Below, one piece after another: positions 6,383 to 52,912 of a stretch of 64,000 bases of DNA. The notes beneath the pieces were generated by a model. It was not told the DNA's origin, ran no database searches, and saw only the letters and a program-made list of their open reading frames with translations. Made by a program: the position numbers and the translations under genes. The DNA comes from Mizuhopecten yessoensis (Eukaryota): positions 182,686-246,685 of the forward strand of contig NW_018480028.1 in NCBI RefSeq assembly GCF_002113885.1. The letters are read 5' to 3'. The stretch's first letter is position 1. Every line of letters starts with the position of its first letter.

Positions 6383-6882
6383 GTGAAACAATACGATTAA
6401 CTGCATAATATAATAAAGTAATGGAATCATGACACAAAGTCTAAGGCGTGTTTTTCTATTCTCAACAAAACTCCTTTAGAGAACAACCTCTGTCTGTATA
6501 CCTTGTATTGATTTGTGTTTTGTTGCAAACTTGAGAAAACTTTGTAACCCAATATACAATGTGTGTAGGTCCAGATTTAAGTCTGGTGGTGCCATGGATG
6601 GGAATATTAAACGGAGATGTCTGTTTGGAGGAGGTGTAGGAGTTCTGTGGACTGCTTACTGCTAGCTGAGATGTGCTGCTCCAATACTTTTATCCTTTTA
6701 TGTACTGTTTAAATCCAATATTACAGACAAATTGTCTAGACTGGGATGATATATATATATATATGATTGACCTAGACTAAAGTTGGATAACTGAGAAAGG
6801 TACCTTACCATATATCATATGTCTGTTTACAGGAACAGGTTGGGTTGGGGAGAGGGCTAACTTCTTAAGTTATAGACTGTGG

Positions 6883-7731
6883 ATCTGTAGATTGTCCTCA
6901 TGGGTATTGGTCTGTGGATTGTCCTCATGGGTATTGGTCTGTGGATTGTCCTCATGGGTATTGGTCTGTGGATTGTCCTCATGGGTATTGGTCTGTGGAT
7001 TGTCCTCATGGGTATTGGTCTGTGGATTGTCCTCATGGGTATTGGTCTGTGGATTGTCCTCATGGGTATTGGTCTGTGGATTGTCCTCATGGGTATTGGT
7101 CTGTGGATTGTCCTCATGGGTATTAGTCTGGGGATTGTCCTCATTGGTATTGGTCTGTAGATTGTCCTCATGGGTATTGGTCTGTGGATTGTCCTCATGG
7201 ATATTGGTCTGTGGATTGTCCTCATGGATATTGGTCTGTGGATTGTCCTCATGGGTATTGGTCTGTGGATTGTCCTTCTTGGTAATTAAGCATGTGGATT
7301 GTCCCTCAATGGTATTGGTCTGTGGATTGTCCTCTTTGGTATTGGTCTGTGGATTGTCCTCATGGGTATTGGTCTGTGGATTGTCTTCATGGGTATTGGT
7401 CTGGGGATTGTCTCAATGGGTATACTGGTCTGTGGATTGTCCTCATGGGTATTGGTCTGTGGATTGTCTCCACGGGTATTGGTTTGTGGATTGTCCTCTT
7501 TGGAATTGGGTTGTGGATTGTCCTCATGGGTATTGGTTTGTGGATTGTCCTCATGGGTATTGGTCTGTGGATTGTCCTTCTTGGAATTGGGTTGTGGATT
7601 GTCCTCATGGGTATTGGTTTGTGGATTGTCCTCATGGGTATTGGTCTGTGGATTGCCCTCATGGGTATTGTTGTGTGGATTGTCCTCATTTGTGTTGATC
7701 TGTGTATTGCCCTCATTGGTATTTGTCTGTA
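6883..7731. repeat. Minisatellite, 27-bp unit, ~31 copies
   Basis: GTCTGTGGATTGTCCTCATGGGTATTG; source of several repetitive ORFs in the track. Confidence 0.97.
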
Positions 7732-8480
7732 GAGACGATGCTAATGTTTATATAAATATCTTTACTGAACACAATGCCAACAATTGTTGTGAACAAAGAA
7801 AAGATTGGGTTTCAGTCTCGGAGATTAATGTCACTCTCAAACCTGTTTAATGTGTTGCAAGTTCCATTATCATGTCGAAGGTTTTTTGGTGAGGAAGACA
7901 TATAAATGAGAAACGCTACATGGGTTTGTAACACAGTTGTTGACACATGAAGGAGATGGGGAACAAACTCACCTTACTCAGGCTCCAAGATGACTCAGGA
8001 ATGATTTACTGACTATTTTCCATTTTGGAAAAATAGGAGCCAGTCTAATGGTAACCCAATAAAACATGGAATAAGATTTGAAATTGCAAAGATTCGCCCC
8101 AGTGGCTTTTAGATACGGATGCTGTGAACGTTCCTGTTGTTTCATGTAACCTTTGCATTAAATATCATTGATTTGACGATGGCTGGCTCTCAGATACCAT
8201 TCAGGATCCTTTGTTTCTAAGCTTCTCTCTGTGTGTGTTACATTTGGCCAGTTTTGAGCCATTCCGTAGCATATATAGCCATCGTAAAACTATTGGTTAT
8301 AAAGGTTCAGGAGTTATCTTGGATACAACTATAAACAATTATACTACTGCCCTTTATGGAGAAATGAGAAAGAAGTTGACCTTTTCCACTGAACAAAGCT
8401 GAGGATGACAACCGATAGTAATCATGTGCTTGAAGGAATGGCTTTGAATTCCATCTACACTTGTGTGGAGTGAATCAATC

Positions 8481-19687: not shown

Positions 19688-21282
19688 GATGATTTGTCCT
19701 GTAATAAGCCCCTCTCCCTACTTTCAGTCAGAGATGATTTGTCCTGTAATAAGCCCATCCCCCTACTTTCAGTCAGTGATGTTTGTCCTGTAATAAGCGC
19801 CTCCCCCTATGTTCAGTCAGAGATGATGTTTTGTCCTGTAATAAGCCCCTCCCCCTACTTTCAGTCACAGATGATTTGTCCTGTAATAAGCCCATCCCCC
19901 TAAGTTCAGTCAGAGATGATTTGTCCTGTTATAAGCCCCTCCCCCTACTTTCAGGCAGAGATGATTTGTCCTGTAATTAGCCCCTCCCCATACTTTCAGT
20001 CATAGATGATTTGTCCTGTAATAAGTCCCTCCCCTTACTTTCAGTCAGAGATGATTTGTCCTGTAATAAGCCCCTCCCCCTCCTATCAGTCAAGAGATGA
20101 TTTGTACTGTAATAAGCCCATCTCCCTACTATCAGTCAGAGATGATTTGTCCTGTAATTAGCCCCTCCCCATACTTTCAGTCATAGATGATTTGTCCTGT
20201 AATAAGTCCCTCCCCTTACTTTCAGTCAGAGATGATTTGTCCTGTAATAAGCCCACCCCCCTACTTTCAGTCAGAGATGTTTGTCCTGTAATAAGCCCCT
20301 CCCCCCATGTTCAGTCAGAGATGATGTGTTGTCCTCTAATAAGCCCCTCCCCCTACTTTCAGTCACAGATGATTTGTCCTGTAATAAGCCCATCCCCCTA
20401 CTATCAGGCAGAGATGATTTGTCCTGTAATAAGCCCCTCCGCCTACTATCAGTCAAGAGATGATTTGTACTGTAATAAGCCCATCTCCCTACTATCAGTC
20501 AGAGATGATTTGTCCTGTAATAAGCCCATCCCCCTACTATCAGTCAGAGATGATTTGTCCTGTAATGAGCCCCTCCCCCTACTATCAGTCAGAGATGATT
20601 TGTTCTGTAAAAAGCCCATCCCCCTACTTTCAGTCACAGATGATTTGTCCTGTAATAAGCCCCTCCCCCTACTTTCAGTCACAGATGATTTGTCCTGTAA
20701 TAAGCCCATCCCCCTACTTTCAGTCAGAGATGTTTGTCCTGTAATAAGCCCCTCCCCCTATTTTCAGTCAGAGATGATGTGTTGTCCTGTAATAAGCCCA
20801 TCCCCCTACTATCAGTCAGAGATGATTTGACCTGTAATAAGCCCCTCCCCCTACTTTCAGTCAGAGATGATTTGTCCTGTAATAAGCCCCTCCCCCTTTT
20901 TTCGGTCAGAGATGATTTGTCCTGTAATAAGCCCATCCCCCTACTATCAGTCAGAGAAGATTTGTCCTGTAAAAAGCCCCTCCCCCTACTTTCAGTCAGA
21001 GATGATTTGTCCTGTAATAAGCCCCTCCCCCTACTTTCAGTCAGAGATGATGTGTTGTCCTGTAATAAGCCTCTCCCCCTACCATCAGTCAGAGATGATT
21101 TGACCTGTAATAAGCCCCTCCCCCTACTTTCAGTCAGAGATGATTTGTCCTGTAATAAGCCCCTCCCCCTTTTTTCAGTCAGAGATGATTTGTCCTGTAA
21201 TAAGCCCCTCCCCCTACTATCAGTCAAGAGATGATTTGTCCTGTAATAAGCCCATCTCCCTACTTTCAGTCAGAGATGATGT
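19688..21282. repeat. Minisatellite, 45-bp unit, ~35 copies
   Basis: GATGATTTGTCCTGTAATAAGCCCCTCCCCCTACTTTCAGTCAGA. Confidence 0.97.
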
Positions 21283-22020
21283 GTTGGCCCTGTGGGCTTA
21301 TTGCAGAATAAATATGGTAAGATGTATTTATACAAAACTGTCCAAAACCTCTGTCCCAAGATCAGGCTGTGAACCTTGCCTGTGTAACGACTCTGTCATT
21401 TAAACCCCTCGTCAAAGAGTTATGTCCCTTGGTGTAATTATCTTGAATATTATTGCACATCTGCCTTCATGTTGTGTGAGTGTTTTTTAATTTCATGAAG
21501 TCCTATTACTGACATCAAACGCTGCATTTATGTGTTCCAATATCCTCTTCAAACAATAAATTCAGAAACGAGAGCAAGGTTTTATGAATGGCAAATATGA
21601 TGGCATAGCTAGGGGTCTTGAGGTCTGATGGAACAGCTCAAAAGCGAGGCAACAGTAAAATTTATTTTTAAATGACAATTACAGATTTATAGATAGTATA
21701 TTATGACGTGATGAGAGCATGTATTACAGTCTTGTGTAGCTAATCATGTCAATAAAAATGTCCCATGATCACAAATTTATACACTTCGAAAAAAACAAAA
21801 TATGTTAAACAAAAGTGAACAGCTTTTACTTAAAGGTGAACAACCACCAAATGCTAAAACACGTCAAATTTAGTTTCAAAATATTAGTAAAACATTATAA
21901 TTAGTTGTCATTTTTTTTTTTTTTAAAGTCTGTATTTGTGCATAATTTATTATTTGAAAACGACCCGTTTAATCGTATACCTTTGGAAGCACAGAGTATG
22001 TACGCAGTTACTTCCCTTTG

Positions 22021-22045
22021 GCTGTGACATCATTTGTGACGACCG
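22021..22045 (+). promoter_or_regulatory. Left subterminal motif of the Kolobok-like element, putative promoter element of the THAP gene
   Basis: GCTGTGACATCATTTGTGACGACCG, 21/25 identical to the reverse complement of 23352-23376; CRE-like core, adjacent CCGGAA; ~55 nt before the ATG at 22100. Confidence 0.45.
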
Positions 22046-22099
22046 GAAAGCGCGCCAGCTGTCAGGTCGGAGGCAGTCGTCCGGAAAACGTAAACAAAC

Positions 22100-22327
22100 A
22101 TGGTACACTGTGCTGAGCTGAACTTTAACAGTAATTCCATTAATGGAGAGAAAATCAGTATGTTCCTGTTCCCGAAGGACAAAAAGCTGCGGAAAACATG
22201 GACAATTAAGGTAAAGAGAAAGGGATTTTCTCCAACCTCACACACGAGATTCTGTCAAAACCATTTTGAACCAGGCAGCTTCGTGAGAGATCCACGATTG
22301 ATGTCGTCGATAGGCTTTGAACCATAA
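22100..22327 (+). pseudogene. Truncated THAP zinc-finger domain (N-terminus of a transposase)
   Basis: MVHCAELNF...MFLFPKDKKLRKTW...P...RFCQNHFEP has the THAP pattern (N-terminal Cys, FP, W, CxxHF); second Cys appears mutated (TTT/Phe); AVPTIF box and DDE domain missing. Confidence 0.85.
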
Positions 22328-22337
22328 GTTTTATACT

Positions 22338-22606
22338 GGTTGTGTGATCTGAGTATGTGAGGGTAAATGTGGTCTACAAGGTTGTGTGATCTGAGTATGT
22401 GAGGGTAAATGTGGTCTACAAGGTGTGTGATCTGAGTATGTGAGGGTAAATGTGGTCTACAAGGTGTGTGATCTGAGTATGCGAGAGTAAATGTGGTCTA
22501 CAAGGTGTGTGATCTGAGTATGTGAGGGTAAATGTGGTCTACAAGGTGTGTGATCTGAGTATGTGAGGATTTTTTTTGTCTACAGAAAGTTTGTGTGATC
22601 TGAATG
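22338..22606. repeat. Minisatellite, 41-42-bp unit, ~6.5 copies, inside the Kolobok-like element
   Basis: GGTGTGTGATCTGAGTATGTGAGGGTAAATGTGGTCTACAA. Confidence 0.93.
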
Positions 22607-23104
22607 TTTTAGTAAAAAGAATATGCAATGAATTGGTATAATTGTTGAAATTTTGAATAATTTAATTATTGTAACTACAAAGAGCTTCTCAATTTGAGTT
22701 TGCCCTGAATAAAGTCCAAAGTATTCCAAAACTTGTGTTTTGTCTGGGTTTTTTTTATAAAGAATAGAACCAAATATATCGGGGAAATTTATTTCTGTAC
22801 ATAATGCTGGCCTCCACAAACAAAGACTTGAAGTAAAACGTTAGCAGCATTCATGGCATGCAACTTCCTACACTTTTAATATAAACAATTGACTCAATAT
22901 AAAATTATCTCTAACGAGTCCGTATAGTTATATACAGTAGGCCTTCCATCACAGGGATATCAGATATTTAACATGCTCCAGACAAACAGAGCTGAAGATA
23001 CATGTTTTATATTTAAAAGTCGGCTTAAAAGTATATATAAAACCTAATTACAATTAAAGAAGTTATATTTTACGATAAATAGGTACCAAAGAGTTTAAAC
23101 AAAC

Positions 23105-23312
23105 CATTCTGGTGTAAGATCTGCATTGATGCAAGCCATACTGCCAGTTTCCTGACCCTGTTCGTCGTCACTAACATCCAACTCGGACGATTCAGATTCA
23201 CTTATAACCTCTAAATAGGTGCAGACTGGCTCATACAGGTATGGCTGAATGTCCAGTGTGAAAAGGAAACTTCTGGAATATCCTCGTTGTCAATAAAATC
23301 CACGGAATCCAT
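23105..23312 (-). pseudogene. First exon of a KolX / P2X7-ballast-like gene, one frameshift
   Basis: Manual translation: MDSVDFIDNEDIPEVSF / frameshift / TLDIQPYLYEPVCTYLEVISESESSELDVSDDEQGQETGSMACINADLTPEW, ending TG|GTTTGT (putative donor). IQPYxxEP + acidic tract + W matches my recollection of the N-terminus of 'P2X7-like' KolX proteins. Confidence 0.65.
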
Positions 23313-23351
23313 AGCCCCGGTACCAACTAGTTCAGTAGTTGTTGTGACAGA

Positions 23352-23376
23352 CGGTTGTCGCAAATGACGTCGCAGC
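23352..23376 (-). promoter_or_regulatory. Right subterminal motif of the Kolobok-like element, putative promoter element of the KolX-like gene
   Basis: Reverse complement GCTGCGACGTCATTTGCGACAACCG, preceded by CCGGAA; ~40 nt before the minus-strand ATG at 23312. Confidence 0.45.
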
Positions 23377-23689
23377 TCTTCCGGTTTAACGAACGATAAC
23401 TCGTGCTAACTTGTATTTGAGATTTTCAATACCGGTTACAAAATTTGCTGATTTTCGCAACTTTTGTGTTTTCAAAATATTTTTCATTTTACGGAAGGAA
23501 TATTTAATGAATAATGCCCCAAAAAATGCAAAATATGTGAAAATGAAATTGGGTTGTTATCACCTTTAATGAAGACGTGCACAGATTGACTGAAAGTGTT
23601 CATTATTTCTATTTATTTGGGGTAAAAAATAATACTTCAATGAATTTCCTAGTAATGTCTAATATTTATTTGAAAAGAAATAGAATCTC

Positions 23690-23775
23690 TTAGCCCTTTT
23701 ACCACTGTAGACCATAATGGACTCATCAATATCAATGCATGGTAGAGTCTACTAAAGCTACATAGGGGTGAAAGA
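23690..23775. mobile_element. Possible distant relative of the TTAA hairpin MITE
   Basis: TTAGCCCTTTTACCACT...AGGGGTGAAAG, similar length and termini, heavily diverged. Confidence 0.3.
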
Positions 23776-23881
23776 TTTTTTCCCAAAACTTATCCAATTT
23801 TAAGTGTCTGGGGGCTCAATATAGAAATCACGAAATCTGTCTGTCCTGAACCAAACAATCTAATGCCTACAGTAGATCCAG

Positions 23882-24268
23882 GTTAGACAAGTTCCACTGC
23901 ACACATGTAGGGACATCAGTGACGTTCTTCTTTAGACAAGTTTCACTACACACATGTAGGGACATTACAGTGAGGTTCCAGTTTAGACAAGTTTCACTGC
24001 ACATATGTAGGGACATCGGTGAGGTTCCTGTTTAGACAAGTTTCACTGCACACATGTAGGGACATCAGTGAGGTTCCTGTTTAGACAAGTTCCACTGCAC
24101 ATATGTAGGAACATCGGTGAGGTTCCTGTTTAGACAAGTTTCACTGCACACATGAAGGGACATCGGTGAGGTTCCTGTTTAGACAAGTTTCACTGCACAC
24201 AATAGGGACATTACAGTGAGGTTCCAGTTTAGACAAGTTTCACTGCACACATGTAGGGGCATCAGTGA
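23882..24268. repeat. Minisatellite, 49-51-bp unit, ~8 copies
   Basis: TTAGACAAGTTTCACTGCACACATGTAGGGACATCAGTGAGGTTCCTGT. Confidence 0.94.
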
Positions 24269-24856
24269 AGTTAACAAGACTTGATTATATAACTGAGGGA
24301 TGAGGACAGATATTGGAGCATAAAACGTTACCAGCATCTTGAGAGAAAATCGGCTATAGTACATTTCTTAATCACTGTTAATTGCTATTAAGAGGCAGTT
24401 ATGTTTTGCTGTGAGTCACCAGATTCTGTCAGTCCTCCGCAATGACACTGATTTATTTTCAACAATGGCCACCGATCACACAAAACACCAGTGAGAAACA
24501 AGAAGTTGTAGTGTCAATACACTTCTGATCTGGGCATGGGTGTTTAGAAATTAATCACAAATTATTGTATCCCACTTGGATTCAAATTAACCCTCATGGG
24601 CCTCTCTGTTAAATTGGAAATTTTTAATTTCTTTACACTACCTTAAAGATAATATACAAGTTCAAAATTAAATTTTAGGAATTCTTTTCTTCATTGAGAG
24701 TGTTGTATATCATAAAAAACAAGAAAAAGTAGATTTCATAGAAATGCATACATTATAAAATAAAAACATGGTGCCATTTTCCCACTGTTGAAAATGATAA
24801 AGAAAAAATGCATTTGAGAAATATAGTCGAGGGACTGAACCTGAAATTTGTGAATT

Positions 24857-26596: not shown

Positions 26597-27513
26597 CAAG
26601 CTGTATAACAATGAAATTATTATAATGAGAGTGTCTTCAATAATTAAATCTTCTGTTAACGAGGTAAGGTTTTATTTCGCAATGAAAACCAGTCCTTTCC
26701 ACTAATATCATGCTGAAAAAAAAGAAAATTTGTGTAAACCAGGACCTTAACAAAATGTTCCCCCTTGGAACCCCCCTCCTCCTCAATCTTAAAATCGATT
26801 ATAGTAGCTGATTGAGTGAATTAACTATCCCCTCTAGAGCCGAAGATCATGATGATGAACACCAAGAGAGAGGAATAATGGAATAAAAAAAACGGAGACA
26901 TTAATTATCTTTATGGAATAATTCGATTATCAGCTTTCATGTGCCTGGGATTACCCTTGAGGAGCCTCTATGAGTGATGATGGCACTAATCAAACCTTTA
27001 TGAGGCCCCTGCCGATAACTGATTAGTGGGGTCATTGCTATAAATAGTTGAGTCAGAACCATCAATGACCGACCTCTCTGTACACAAGCCAGTCTGGTCC
27101 TTCCTGTACTAAATATACTCATCATACCCTGGAACAGTCATGAGTTCACAGAAAAAAACAATCTGAAATTGCGACATTTTTCAAAATTTGTGACAAAAAT
27201 TTCATTGTAGAGTGACTGGAATTGTACCATTGCAGCTGTGCATTCCCCAAAATAAATTGCTGCACTAAATTCTTGTAATGGTGTAAACTTTTGTCCAGCA
27301 GTAAATTTTGGTTTTAAAGGGGGATTAAGCGCTCAGTTAGAGGACAATTACTTACGTCAGTCTTAAAACTCAAGTTTGAACCTTTGTGAGCCAAAGGAAT
27401 GAATGAGTTCGGCGAATCATGTGACAATGCATCACATGGTCGTTAAACAACGACTCTAGAAACCCTTGTATTAAACAAACTTTGATACCCAGTTTTTATT
27501 TCTGTACATTCAG

Positions 27514-27720
27514 GAGCTGTAACAGGAAGCATTTTACGCTGTGCCCATTTCAACAGAACCACACAAATACAGTACCCGGACATCACTGTGACCTTGACCT
27601 CTGATGGTATACCTGTCGTCAAAAACCATGTCACAGTCCAGTGTCAGGACGAAAACCATTTCTGTTACACAACCTGGAACAGGAACAAAACGACAGGACA
27701 GGTTACGTCGTTCAACCAAG
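27514..27720 (+). CDS. BMPR2: Internal coding exon (phase 1-1) of a TGF-beta family type II receptor, BMPR2/wit-like ectodomain, first half
   Basis: Acceptor TTTTTATTTCTGTACATTCAG| and donor CAAG|GTAAGA; 207 bp, stop-free: (G)AVTGSILRCAHFNRTTQIQYPDITVTLTSDGIPVVKNHVTVQCQDENHFCYTTWNRNKTTGQVTSFNQ(G). The C...CxxxxxxCYxxW...QG pattern and an exon end inside the Gly of QG resemble vertebrate BMPR2 exon 2; two N-glycosylation sequons. Orthology is inferred, not searched. Confidence 0.72.
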
Positions 27721-27809
27721 GTAAGAGACATTTAGTTATTGGGTATATATCAGACTACTGAAAAGCCTCTCTTCAGTGTTTCTTATGGTTCTTCTTTCTC
27801 AATTTCTTC

Positions 27810-49906: not shown

Positions 49907-50903
49907 TTTAAATTAGAAAACATTGCGAAGTATAAGGCTGTTGTGTCCTCAGATTGTCGCCAAAGATATTTCTTTGTCGACACAGCTGTATTCCCAAGCC
50001 GACAGACTCTTGATGTTTCTCCTGTAGGTTGGCTCCACCCTATACCCGCGGGGGTCATTTCTGTTGATCAACGTCAAAGGATGGGAAAGTTTGTTTCGAT
50101 CTGATTCAACATCTCCAAAACATCCAGACAGGGATTGGAAAGCCTTTGTTTTCTCTCCATTAGTGGTGGTTGTTGAAGTTACAATGTGGTATATAGACAC
50201 AAGTCGATGAATGGCCATTTTGTTTGTCACTTGCAAAGGTGACTTTAAGGGATTATTGTATACTGGGAAATGTTTGCCTTTTTTGCCCTCCGCAATGAGA
50301 GTGAATTCATTATCACTACAAACATTTGTAAATAACATCATATACACAAAAATGGACTGTGAAGGGCAAAATTAAAACTAGACAATCAAGGATTTTCTGT
50401 TGCAATAACGAAGGGGAAAAGAGATATAAATGAGGGTCCACCTTAAATGTCTGCACACGAAACAGAGCATACAAATACATGTAGGTTTTTACTTGTCTTG
50501 TTGGTTCTGGAAATTGTTTCGTCTAGAAGACAGTCACTCCACAGGGGATCAATTGAAACTTTACCTTCTCTGGAATAAAACTTCGCCAAAAATAAATAAA
50601 ACCAGGAATATTTCATTTCCCAAAACCCACAGGACTTTGGTTGGCAATGCCAAAATTAAATTAGGAGAGAAGTGTTAGTCTTCTATCAAATTCTGTTACT
50701 GGATAATATCTCTGAGGTTATCTGATTGTTTTATTTGTTCATTATATATAATAGTTCATAGTCTTTTTAAATTTAATCAGATTTGAAAAGAGAATCAACA
50801 GGTTGTGGAGAATAGGACATTTGAATAAAATCACTTGTTATGGTATGTACCAGAACTTCTCTTGTGAGTCCATCCTCAATGATGTTATAACACATTACAC
50901 GTA

Positions 50904-52552
50904 GGACCACCCTCTCTAACTGTGATCTACACCAGAACCTGTCTTGTGAGACGTCCCTCTCTAACTGTGATCTACACCAGACCCTGTCTTGTGAGACCAC
51001 CCTCTCTAACTGTGATCTACACCAGACCCTGTCTTGTGAGACCACCCTCTCTAATGGTGATCTATACCAGAACCTGTCTTGTGTGACCACCCTCTCTAAT
51101 TGTGATTTACACCAGAACCTGTCTTGTGAGACCACCCACTCTAACTGTGATCTACACCAGAACCTGTCTTATAGGACCACCCTCTCTAATTGTGATCTAC
51201 ACCAGAACCTGTCTTGTTAGTCCTCCGTCGCTAACCGTGATCTACACCATAACCTTTCTTGTGTGACCACCCTCTCTAACTGTGATCTACACCAGACCCT
51301 GTCTTGTGAGACCACCCTCTCTAACTGTGATCTACACCAGACCCTGTCTTGTGAGACCACCCTCTCTAATGGTGATCTATACCAGAACCTGTCTTGTGTA
51401 CATGTGACCACCCTCTCTAATTGTGATTTACACCAGAACCTGTCTTGTGAGACCACCCATTCTAACTGTGATCTACACCAGAACCTGTCGTGTGTGACCA
51501 CCCTCTCTAACTGTGATCTACACCAGACCCTGTCTTGTGAGACCCCCCTCTCTAATTTTGATCTACACCAGAACCTGTCTTGTGAGACCACCCATTCTAA
51601 CTGTGATCTACACCAGAACCTGTCTTATAGGACCACCCTCTCTAATTGTGATCTACACCATAACCTTTATTGTGTGACCACCCTCTCTAATTGTGATCTA
51701 TAGCAGAACCTGTCTTGTGTGACCACCCTCTCTAATTGTGATTTACACCAGAACCTGTCTTGTGAGACCACCCTCTCTAACTGTGATCTACACCAGAACC
51801 TGTCTTATAGGACCACCCTCTCTAATTGTGATCTACACCAGAACCTGTCTTGTTAGTCCTCCGTCGCTAACCGTGATCTACACCATAACCTTTCTTGTGT
51901 GACCACCCTCTCTAACTGTGATCTACACCAGACCCTGTCTTGTGAGACCCCCCTCTCTAATTTTGATCTACACCAGAACCTGTCTTGTGAGTCCTCCCTC
52001 TCTAATTGTGATCTATACCAGAACCTGCCTTGTGAGACCACCCTCTCTAACTGTGATCTACACCAGACCCTGTCTTGTGAGACCACCCTCTCTAATCGTG
52101 ATCTACACCATAACCTTTCTTGTGTGACAACCCTCTCTAATTGTGATCTACACCAGAACCTGTCTGGTGAGACCACCCTCTCTAGCTGTGATCTACACCA
52201 GAACCTGTCTTGTTTACATGTGACCACCCTCTCTAATTGTTATCTATTCCAGAACCTGTCTTTTGAGACCACCCTCTCTAATTGTGATCTACACCATAAC
52301 CTTTATTGTGTGACCACCCTCTCTAATTGTGATCTATACCAGAACCTGTCTTGTGAGACCACCCATTCTAACTGTGATCTACACCAGAACCTGTCTTGTG
52401 AGACCACCCTCTCTAATTGTGATCTACACCATAACCTTTCTTGTGTGACCACCCTCTCTAATTGTGATCTACACCAGAACCTGTCTTGTGTGACCACCCT
52501 CTCTAATTGTGATCTATACCAGAACCTGTCTTGTGTGACCACCCTCTCTAAT
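50904..52552. repeat. Minisatellite, 45-bp unit, ~36 copies
   Basis: GACCACCCTCTCTAACTGTGATCTACACCAGAACCTGTCTTGTGA. Confidence 0.97.
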
Positions 52553-52912
52553 TTTTACATGATTACTCTGTTATTCTGTGAATACACCCCCTCTCATATA
52601 AATTTTGTAGGAAGTTGTGTAAGATGACTTATTATGATGTCATAAAATTATCAACACCACTGGTTTTCATATCACATGATCAGGTCTCGATAACCACAGT
52701 ACAACTTCAACAACATCTTGTAAAAGCATGTTTTTTGCAATATTCACGAAAGATATGAAATTGGTTTCAATTTCATACGAGATTTATGAAACTTATCAAT
52801 TGTTTTTTTATTTGGTCTTGCAAGAGGTCTGCTTAAATGAAATATTCTTAAAAGCGTTTCATAGAAATAGAAACTGTAGTAAGATCCTGGCTGTAAGTGC
52901 AGTGTATCCGTG

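What the first reader, a model, noticed from the sequence alone, without database searches (positions are those of the whole stretch)
21830..23569. Two-gene Kolobok-type transposon relic: THAP transposase stub facing a P2X7-ballast-like (KolX) stub
Seen: TTAA on both sides, imperfect TIRs with AG...CT ends, a THAP ORF starting 266 bp inside the left end, and a frameshifted minus-strand exon starting 253 bp inside the right end (IQPYLYEP + acidic tract + PEW|GT) that the ORF track misses. Known: Kolobok elements have TTAA TSDs, RR...YY ends, a THAP-containing transposase and a convergent second gene, KolX, related to the P2X7 cytoplasmic ballast domain and of unknown function. Inference: this is a deletion derivative of a possibly uncatalogued invertebrate Kolobok family, sitting in the intron upstream of the receptor exon.
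Basis: partly seen in the sequence, partly recalled or inferred. Interest (0 to 1): 0.8.

Follow-up and report, generated by a model that had tools for sequence, protein, structure and literature searches.

The report
Dead Kolobok-type transposon copy in scallop
This is a broken, non-autonomous copy of a multi-copy cut-and-paste DNA transposon of scallops whose ends and THAP gene fit the known Kolobok superfamily; the proposed link of its second small gene to the P2X7 "ballast" (KolX) protein could not be shown.

Summary
A 1,732-bp element (21834-23565) lies between two TTAA. It has short imperfect inverted ends (AGGTGA..., ...TCACCT), a THAP ORF starting 266 bp inside the left end, and a frameshifted minus-strand ORF starting 253 bp inside the right end.

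Independent data show a real transposon family. In three DNA runs, depth jumps from single-copy to roughly 8-50x at the two TTAA sites. A second copy in Mizuhopecten yessoensis (L001, 3.66 kb, 93-94% identical arms) has different flanks but is again TTAA-bounded. A Pecten maximus relative (L002) keeps TTAA|AGGTGAAT upstream of a 71%-identical THAP gene.

TTAA duplication, AG...CT termini and a THAP gene fit Kolobok and not piggyBac.

This copy is dead:
- The second zinc-binding Cys of THAP is changed to Phe.
- THAP is cut off before its AVPTIF box.
- The second ORF carries a 2-bp insertion that other copies lack.
- The interior is replaced by filler that includes a 41-bp minisatellite.

Two points are not shown:
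- No DDE transposase or ballast domain occurs in any accessible copy.
- The "KolX" stub has no detectable relative. It ends in PEW, where KolX alignments start PxWCxC, but the splice donor is weak and a stop follows two codons later.

Verdict: an ordinary new member of a known kind. The scan noted similar Kolobok relics elsewhere in this genome.

The parts
21830..21833 (.). Left TTAA target-site duplication
   Evidence: Sequence. Homology to copy L001 starts exactly here. Another-copy contig aligns from 21831, and flank unitigs end at 21856/21857.
21834..21847 (+). Left terminal inverted repeat, AGGTGA-ACAACC.. (5'-AG terminus)
   Evidence: Conserved in L001 as AAGTGAACAACC and in P. maximus L002 as AGGTGAATAAC.
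22021..22045 (+). Left subterminal 25-nt motif. It holds a CRE-like core TGACATCA, which reads TGACGTCA in the other copies. It lies 55 bp upstream of the THAP ATG.
   Evidence: Inverted repeat I2, 84% complementary. 22029 A>G in all multi-copy contigs and in L001.
22100..22327 (+). THAP ORF stub, 75 aa. Cys9 is changed to Phe, and the ORF is truncated after ..GFEP, before the AVPTIF box.
   Evidence: Pfam THAP E = 3.2e-9, model positions 10-61 of 87. It is 93% identical to the 125-aa M. yessoensis protein P0001, which covers the whole model. 22125 T>G (Phe to Cys) in all other copies.
22324..23090 (.). Interior not shared with copy L001, read as filler or replacement DNA. It holds no coding potential.
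   Evidence: BLAST homology to L001 stops at 22323 and resumes at 23091. Depth is only about 3x single copy at 22613-23016. No Pfam hit for the longest open frame in the interior, 22583-22840(-), the only one scanned. The other open frames listed are short and mostly minisatellite-derived.
22341..22568 (.). 41-bp minisatellite, 5.5 copies, 97% matches, starting 17 bp after the left breakpoint
   Evidence: Tandem Repeats Finder.
23104..23312 (-). Second ORF, the putative KolX-like first exon. It runs from the ATG at 23312 through a +2-nt frameshift near 23260-23261 to ..LDIQPYLYEP.., an acidic tract and ..TPEW. It is followed by a weak donor GTTTGT and by TAA two codons later.
   Evidence: Translations. 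It is intact as a 71-codon ORF in L001. The 2 nt are absent from the other copies. No family or relative was found.
23352..23376 (-). Right subterminal 25-nt motif, the mirror image of 22021-22045, 40 bp upstream of the minus-strand ATG
   Evidence: 23356 T>C and 23372 G>A in other copies make the two motifs 24/25 identical and give a perfect TGACGTCA.
23551..23565 (-). Right terminal inverted repeat (reverse complement AGGTGATAACAACC..; 3'-CT terminus)
   Evidence: L001 has ..TTTTTATCACCT|TTAA.
23566..23569 (.). Right TTAA target-site duplication
   Evidence: Sequence. A unitig into the right flank starts at 23544. L001 homology ends 6 nt later.

Best explanation
The stretch is one old, inactive, non-autonomous copy of a moderately repeated cut-and-paste DNA transposon family of pectinid scallops. 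The window is most likely Mizuhopecten yessoensis. The family is best classified in the Kolobok superfamily.

Shown:
- It inserted at a TTAA and duplicated it.
- It carries about 14-bp imperfect terminal inverted repeats with AG...CT ends.
- It carries a near-identical 25-nt inverted subterminal motif with a CRE-like TGACGTCA core about 190 bp inside each end.
- It has two inward-reading ORFs that start 40-55 bp behind those motifs.
- The left ORF is a THAP zinc-finger DNA-binding domain.
- This copy carries a Cys-to-Phe change at a zinc ligand, a truncation of THAP before the AVPTIF box, a 2-nt insertion in the right ORF, and replacement of the interior by 767 bp of non-coding filler with a 41-bp minisatellite.

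Inferred:
- The THAP ORF is the N-terminal DNA-binding part of a Kolobok DDD/E transposase that full-length family members carry or carried.
- That transposase recognises the terminal and/or subterminal repeats and moved such deletion derivatives in trans.
- The interior was lost by abortive gap repair after an excision.
- The subterminal motifs serve as promoters and/or transposase-binding sites.

Open: whether the right ORF is the first exon of a KolX (P2X7-ballast-like) gene. I put this at about 45%.
For: Boundaries, TTAA duplication and copy number:
- Depth steps at both TTAA sites, and the flank unitigs break there, in three DNA runs.
- The second copy L001 has other flanks, is TTAA-bounded on both sides, and has arms 93.0% and 94.5% identical.
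- The P. maximus locus L002 has TTAA|AGGTGAATAAC 213 bp upstream of a THAP gene that is 71% identical at protein level.
- Other copies with shorter left arms were seen as joints 21856>22079 and 21884>22029.

THAP.

Damage specific to this copy: 22125 T>G and the 2 nt at 23260-23261 absent in the other copies.

Low-level RNA from other family members, with strand bias matching the two ORF orientations.

Literature:
- Kolobok makes TTAA duplications and has 5'-RR..YY-3' termini, unlike piggyBac (PMC9587614).
- Kolobok transposases carry DDE + THAP + H2CH. All full-length Xenopus Kolobok ends start AG next to TTAA, and T2-MITE ends read AGGRR (PMC6004289).
- Kolobok occurs in molluscs, and KolobokP families are catalogued in both scallop species.
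Against: - No DDD/E transposase, H2CH finger or ballast domain was found in any of the three accessible loci. Superfamily assignment therefore rests on ends, target site and THAP only.
- Only two short annotated THAP proteins related to the stub were found. Those searches could not see proteins longer than 219 aa.
- The right ORF has no detectable homologue. Its donor is weak, and an in-frame stop follows two codons after the Trp.
- No empty site was seen, so mobility is inferred from copies, not observed.
Confidence: 0.75

Rival explanations
1. The second (minus-strand) ORF is not a KolX exon. It is either a complete small acidic ORF of about 71 codons ending at the TAA two codons after the Trp, or non-coding sequence that happens to be open. 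Under this reading the family is a THAP-carrying Kolobok-type element without a ballast gene.
For: - No Pfam hit.
- Only one hit among 1.84 billion representative proteins, a 3,245-aa low-complexity protein, and none by word search.
- No C.C..C...CC motif in any frame of the window, L001 or L002.
- The donor ATG|GTTYGT has a pyrimidine at +3, and a stop follows.
- The window-L001 homology ends 13 nt after the Trp codon in both copies.
- No splice joint was seen in RNA reads.
Against: - The ORF is intact in L001 and in the multi-copy contigs.
- It sits symmetrically to the THAP gene behind the same 25-nt motif.
- It ends in P-E-W, exactly where the published KolX/P2X7 ballast alignment begins (P-x-W-C-x-C-G-x-C; Fig. 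S6 of PMC9587614).
- ZCD/KolX proteins have variable N-termini without homologues (PMC7016195), so the lack of hits is expected.
- The searches would miss N-termini below about 50-60% identity.
Confidence: 0.45
2. It is a non-autonomous piggyBac-superfamily element. piggyBac also duplicates TTAA, and a few piggyBac families carry a KolX-C-like gene.
For: - TTAA duplication.
- PMC9587614 reports KolX-like proteins in a few piggyBac families.
Against: - The termini are AG...CT (AA...CT in L001), not the CCC...GGG of piggyBac. PMC9587614 uses exactly this to separate the two superfamilies.
- A THAP domain is a stated Kolobok transposase feature (PMC6004289).
- No piggyBac transposase domain occurs in any locus.
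Confidence: 0.04
3. The THAP ORF is not a transposase remnant. It is a stand-alone THAP-only protein carried by the element, a KP-like DNA-binding repressor or a captured host gene. The L001-like 125-aa form would then be the functional product.
For: - Both annotated relatives are short THAP-only proteins with complete C2CH and AVPTIF motifs (P0001 125 aa, P0003 192 aa).
- No catalytic domain was found downstream in L001 or L002.
- The association of the THAP gene with the left end is conserved between two scallop genera.
Against: - The searches could not see proteins longer than 219 aa, so full-length transposases are not excluded.
- The regions after the THAP domain in P0001 and P0003 are unrelated to each other, as expected for read-through into junk.
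- The copy in the window is clearly decayed.
Confidence: 0.12

Closest known systems
Kolobok superfamily, Kol0 lineage (e.g. Kolobok-1_XT; transposase + KolX), Kapitonov & Jurka 2007; Kojima & Bao 2022 (PMC9587614)
   Same: TTAA target-site duplication, 5'-RR...YY-3' (AG...CT) termini, a THAP-domain ORF at one end and a second gene in the same element. The second ORF ends P-E-W, where KolX ballast alignments begin P-x-W-C-x-C.
   Different: No DDD/E/H2CH transposase and no ballast (Zn-Cys) domain is present in this copy or in the two related loci that could be fetched. The KolX assignment is positional only. The paper lists Kol0 hosts as vertebrates, annelids, cnidarians and sponges, not molluscs.
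Xenopus XKol elements and T2-MITEs (Kolobok; PMC6004289)
   Same: TTAA flanks. TIRs start AG or AGG (compare XKol A3, AGGACATGTCAACCCC, with AGGTGATAACAACCC here). The families consist mostly of internally deleted non-autonomous copies. The transposase carries a THAP domain with C2CH and AVPTIF.
   Different: The T2-MITE signature is AGGRR, whereas here it is AGGTG (AAGTG in L001). The Xenopus full-length elements are 6.8-13.9 kb with intact transposase; here only 1.7-kb and 3.7-kb derivatives were seen.
KolobokP families of the same scallops (KolobokP-1/2_MiYe, _PeMa; PMC9587614)
   Same: Same superfamily candidate, same host species and a 4-bp duplication.
   Different: KolobokP has 450/660-bp long terminal direct repeats and a His-Me nuclease. 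This element has no direct terminal repeats and different termini.
piggyBac superfamily
   Same: TTAA-specific insertion.
   Different: piggyBac ends are CCC...GGG and its transposase has no THAP domain. Tested here and not met.
P-element KP repressor (THAP-only internal deletion derivative). The comparison is from general knowledge.
   Same: An internally deleted transposon copy that still encodes only the THAP DNA-binding N-terminus (the L001 form).
   Different: Different superfamily (8-bp duplication). No evidence here of repressor activity, and the window copy has lost a zinc ligand.

Membership tests
Kolobok superfamily | [quoted passage not shown] | tested here: met
   TTAA on both sides in the window and in the independent copy L001. 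TTAA at the left end in P. maximus L002. The repeat boundary from read depth and unitig ends coincides with it.
Kolobok superfamily | Termini 5'-RR ... YY-3' (AG in the Xenopus elements) | tested here: met
   AG...CT in the window, AA...CT in L001 and AG at the L002 left end. The criterion is from PMC9587614 and PMC6004289.
Kolobok superfamily | DDD/E transposase with C/DxxH signature and H2CH zinc finger | tested here: not met
   Absent from this copy, L001 and L002: no Pfam domain other than THAP in the larger open frames scanned (>=50 aa), and the window interior's other short frames look non-coding by eye. As a family-level feature it remains untested, because no autonomous copy could be fetched and the protein searches were length-limited.
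Kolobok superfamily | THAP DNA-binding domain in the transposase | tested here: inconclusive
   The THAP domain is present (Pfam E = 3e-9 for the stub and 1e-15 to 3e-17 for relatives). Its continuity with a transposase was not shown.
Kol0 lineage (KolX-encoding Kolobok) | Second protein KolX with cytoplasmic-ballast fold (7 conserved Cys, P2RX7_C) | tested here: inconclusive
   A second ORF exists and ends P-E-W, where the KolX alignment starts. However, no Cys motif or Pfam match was found in any locus, and no homologue of the stub.
piggyBac superfamily | TTAA duplication plus CCC...GGG termini and DDE_Tnp_1_7 transposase | tested here: not met
   TTAA is met, but the termini are AG...CT and no such domain is present.
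KolobokP lineage | [quoted passage not shown] | tested here: not met
   The two arms are related only as short inverted repeats. No nuclease ORF was found.

The most novel reading that the evidence does not exclude
The family may be more than decaying debris. It could be a two-gene, non-autonomous Kolobok derivative that persists in Pectinidae. In this reading a THAP-only protein (the 125-aa L001 form) and a small acidic partner are each driven by a near-perfect inverted 25-nt CRE-containing subterminal motif. The THAP-only product would act as a KP-like repressor or competitor at Kolobok ends. A more modest alternative is that it is the first Kol0/KolX lineage documented in molluscs, with an intron placed exactly at the start of the ballast domain.
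Probability: 0.12. Interest if true: 0.5.

Novelty: new member of a known kind. Interest (0 to 1): 0.2.

Why it matters
In itself it matters little. It is one decayed non-autonomous DNA transposon copy in a repeat-rich, apparently non-coding stretch of a scallop genome.

It has two small uses:
- It shows that two GenBank/RefSeq 'THAP domain-containing protein' models in M. yessoensis and P. maximus are transposon ORFs.
- If full-length relatives prove to carry a KolX gene, the family would extend the Kol0 lineage to bivalves. Kol0 is the proposed source of the vertebrate P2X7 ballast domain. Such relatives would also give an exon boundary right at the start of that domain, which bears on how a KolX exon could be captured by a host gene.

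Tried and rejected
1. KolX identity by sequence. None of the following gave a meaningful hit:
- Pfam on both reading-frame pieces of the exon, searched separately by reference and never joined, and on the intact L001 ORF.
- phmmer of the 52-aa in-frame piece against 1.84 billion representatives. The one hit is a 3,245-aa low-complexity protein, rejected as compositional.
- Word search with the 91-aa L001 ORF.

2. Search for ballast or DDE coding remnants. Regex for C.C..C...CC, WC.C..C and PY.[FY]EP in six frames of the window, L001 and L002 found only the stub itself. Pfam on 82 open frames from L001, L002 and the window interior found only THAP.

3. More copies:
- Exact-protein look-up of the THAP stub: none.
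- Metagenome scans by protein and by the TIR pattern: none.
- The scan's own index by sequence: blank, which per the operators means nothing.
- The P. maximus locus has a left end but no recognisable right end or second ORF within 14 kb.

4. piggyBac and KolobokP membership: rejected on termini and architecture.

5. Host-gene context. The candidate 'receptor exon' at 27486-27758 has no Pfam or PDB match. No open frame of at least 58 aa in the 64-kb window other than THAP hits Pfam.

6. Rfam and tRNA scans of 21700-24100: nothing.

7. The supplements of PMC9587614 and PMC7016195 hold only the ballast-domain parts of KolX/ZCD proteins. The N-terminal 'PYxFEP + acidic' resemblance, which I also recall from memory, could therefore not be tested.

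Full report
**What is there**

The sequence shows TTAA at 21830-21833 and at 23566-23569. The 1,732 bp between them begin AGGTGAACAACC. At the other end, reverse-complemented, they read AGGTGATAACAACC. This is a short imperfect terminal inverted repeat with AG...CT termini.

An ATG at 22100, 266 bp inside the left end, opens a 75-codon ORF. It matches Pfam THAP (E = 3.2e-9, model positions 10-61 of 87).

On the minus strand an ATG at 23312, 253 bp inside the right end, opens a frame that breaks near 23260. It continues in another frame through ..LDIQPYLYEP.., an acidic/Ser-rich tract and ..TPEW, ending at 23104.

A 25-nt motif at 22021-22045 recurs inverted at 23352-23376 (84% complementary). 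The two motifs lie 188 and 189 bp from the respective ends, and 55 and 40 bp upstream of the two ATGs.

The middle holds a 41-bp x 5.5 minisatellite (22341-22568) and AT-rich sequence without credible ORFs.

**Is it a real mobile element?**

Three lines of evidence say yes.

(i) Contigs of three DNA runs from three studies of the same organism were laid on 21300-24300.
- Summed depth is 5-19 in the left flank and rises to 40-750 in the bin that contains 21834. It stays high up to the bin that contains 23565.
- The unique-flank unitigs end at 21856/21857 and one starts at 23544. For 31-mers this puts the start of shared sequence within a few bases of each TTAA.
- A multi-copy contig (depth 38 against 5 for single copy) aligns from 21831.
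- All three runs carry the insertion, and no empty-site joint was reported.

(ii) A word search with the THAP stub found a 125-aa GenBank protein of Mizuhopecten yessoensis (P0001, 93% identity).
- Its locus L001 holds a second copy of 3,664 bp (L001 9730-13393), flanked by TTAA on both sides in unrelated flanking DNA.
- It aligns to the window from exactly 21830 to 22323 (93.0%) and from 23091 to 23575 (94.5%), and nowhere in between.

(iii) A Pecten maximus protein (P0003, 71% identity) lies in locus L002. There TTAA|AGGTGAATAAC stands 213 bp upstream of its ATG, and the upstream region including the subterminal motif is about 78% identical.

The family is therefore older than, or has moved between, two scallop genera. 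The window is most likely M. yessoensis; this is inferred from the 93-94% paralogue, since the run organism is coded.

**State of this copy**

Relative to L001 and to the multi-copy contigs, the window copy differs as follows.
- 22125 G>T turns the second zinc-binding Cys of the C2CH THAP finger into Phe.
- It lacks everything after ..GFEP. L001 and P0003 go on through the AVPTIF-type box (..GAIPTPF / ..GAIPTIF) and match the whole Pfam model.
- It has two extra nucleotides at 23260-23261 that break the minus-strand ORF. That ORF is an uninterrupted 71 codons in L001.
- 22029 G>A spoils a TGACGTCA core in the left motif.

With the other copies' letters at 22029, 23356 and 23372, the two 25-nt motifs are 24/25 identical and both contain a perfect palindromic TGACGTCA.

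The interior 22324-23090 is absent from L001 and is present at only about 3x single-copy depth. I read it as filler acquired when the interior was lost.

RNA reads of one run cover both ORF regions at very low depth. Their strand bias fits the two orientations, and they carry the letters of other copies, not of this one.

The pieces of the frameshifted exon were searched separately by reference.

**Classification**

Kojima & Bao 2022 (PMC9587614) state that Kolobok makes TTAA duplications and that its termini, unlike piggyBac's, are 5'-RR..YY-3'. They state that the Kol0 lineage encodes a transposase plus KolX, and that KolX is homologous to the P2X7 cytoplasmic ballast. They also note that a few piggyBac families carry a KolX-C-like protein.

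Hikosaka et al. 2018 (PMC6004289) state that Kolobok transposases usually carry DDE, THAP and H2CH motifs. They report that all full-length Xenopus Kolobok ends start AG next to TTAA (for example AGGACATGTCAACCCC), and that T2-MITEs have AGGRR.

The element here meets the target-site, terminus and THAP criteria and fails the piggyBac terminus criterion. It lacks the long terminal direct repeats of the KolobokP families already catalogued in both scallops.

The catalytic transposase could not be examined. None of the three loci has any Pfam domain besides THAP. The protein word searches were blind to proteins over 219 aa. No tool here searches the scallop assemblies by DNA. Kolobok is therefore the best-supported assignment (about 0.75), not a proven one.

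**The KolX question**

In favour:
- The second ORF mirrors the THAP gene behind the same motif.
- It is intact in other copies.
- It ends P-E-W, and the published ballast alignment starts P-x-W-C-x-C-G-x-C (Fig. S6).
- ZCD/KolX proteins are reported to have the domain at the C-terminus behind variable N-termini without homologues (PMC7016195).

Against:
- No Pfam hit.
- No relative among 1.84 billion representatives, apart from one compositional hit.
- No word-search hit.
- No Cys-motif exon in the window, L001 or L002.
- The would-be donor ATG|GTTTGT (GTTCGT in L001) has a pyrimidine at +3, and a TAA follows two codons after the Trp.
- No splice joint was seen.

The negative searches are weak evidence. 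A 52-residue, partly low-complexity query needs roughly 45 bits to pass in a library of that size. I put KolX-exon at about 45% and 'complete small ORF or non-coding' at about 45%.

**Mechanism (committed)**

- The transposase of a full-length family member binds the ends, through its THAP domain and/or other parts, at the TIR and perhaps at the 25-nt motif.
- It cuts the element out and inserts it at TTAA, which is duplicated.
- Deletion derivatives that keep about 490 bp of each arm are moved in trans.
- This copy has since decayed and is inert.
- The 25-nt motifs with their CRE core most likely also act as promoters for the two inward genes.

Only the structural facts are shown. Binding, trans-mobilisation and promoter activity are inferred.

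**Context and verdict**

Its C..HFCYTTW..NQG pattern reminds me of a TGF-beta type-II receptor ectodomain, but it has no Pfam or PDB match. 'Intronic' therefore remains unverified.

The scan's index lists other first-reader notes of Kolobok relics and a ballast-like gene elsewhere in this genome. I could not reach those sequences, so they are leads only.

Overall this is an ordinary, decayed member of a known transposon superfamily. Interest is low (0.2).

Noticed in passing
window 23689-23774: An ~85-bp unit just right of the element has a summed contig depth of about 2e5, against 5-19 for single-copy flanks, in three DNA runs. 'Goes back 85' joints show it is tandem elsewhere. It is abundant on both strands in an RNA run. 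It has no Rfam or tRNA match, and only one copy occurs in the window plus L001 and L002. It is probably a major satellite or SINE-like repeat of this scallop.
   Followed up: partly
window 27486-27758 (+): This open frame has a Cys pattern (C..HFCYTTW..NQG) resembling, from memory, half of a TGF-beta/activin type-II receptor ectodomain. It has no Pfam or PDB match.
   Followed up: partly
L001 10001-10378 and L002 10001-13873: The GenBank proteins 'THAP domain-containing protein 2' (M. yessoensis, 125 aa) and 'THAP domain-containing protein 1-like' (P. maximus, 192 aa, 2 exons) are ORFs of TTAA-flanked transposon relics. Their tails after the THAP domain are unrelated to each other.
   Followed up: yes
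window 22341-22568 and 23877-23998: A 41-bp x 5.5 minisatellite lies inside the element's filler, and a 49-bp x 2.4 tandem repeat lies just downstream. The whole window is rich in such arrays (e.g. 6857-7850, 20192-21234, 50773-52627), which produce long spurious ORFs.
   Followed up: no
window 21856-22079 and 21884-22029 (joints in other copies): Contigs of other family members skip 222 or 144 nt within the left arm, and the outermost ~170 bp have about twice the depth of the THAP region. This suggests that shorter MITE-like derivatives of the same family exist.
   Followed up: no
L002 22141-23184: A tandem array in the P. maximus locus repeats TT[TC]AAGGTGA at 145- and 290-bp intervals (hits at 22175, 22320, 22610, 22900 and 23045). 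It resembles the element's terminal hexamer, probably by chance.
   Followed up: no
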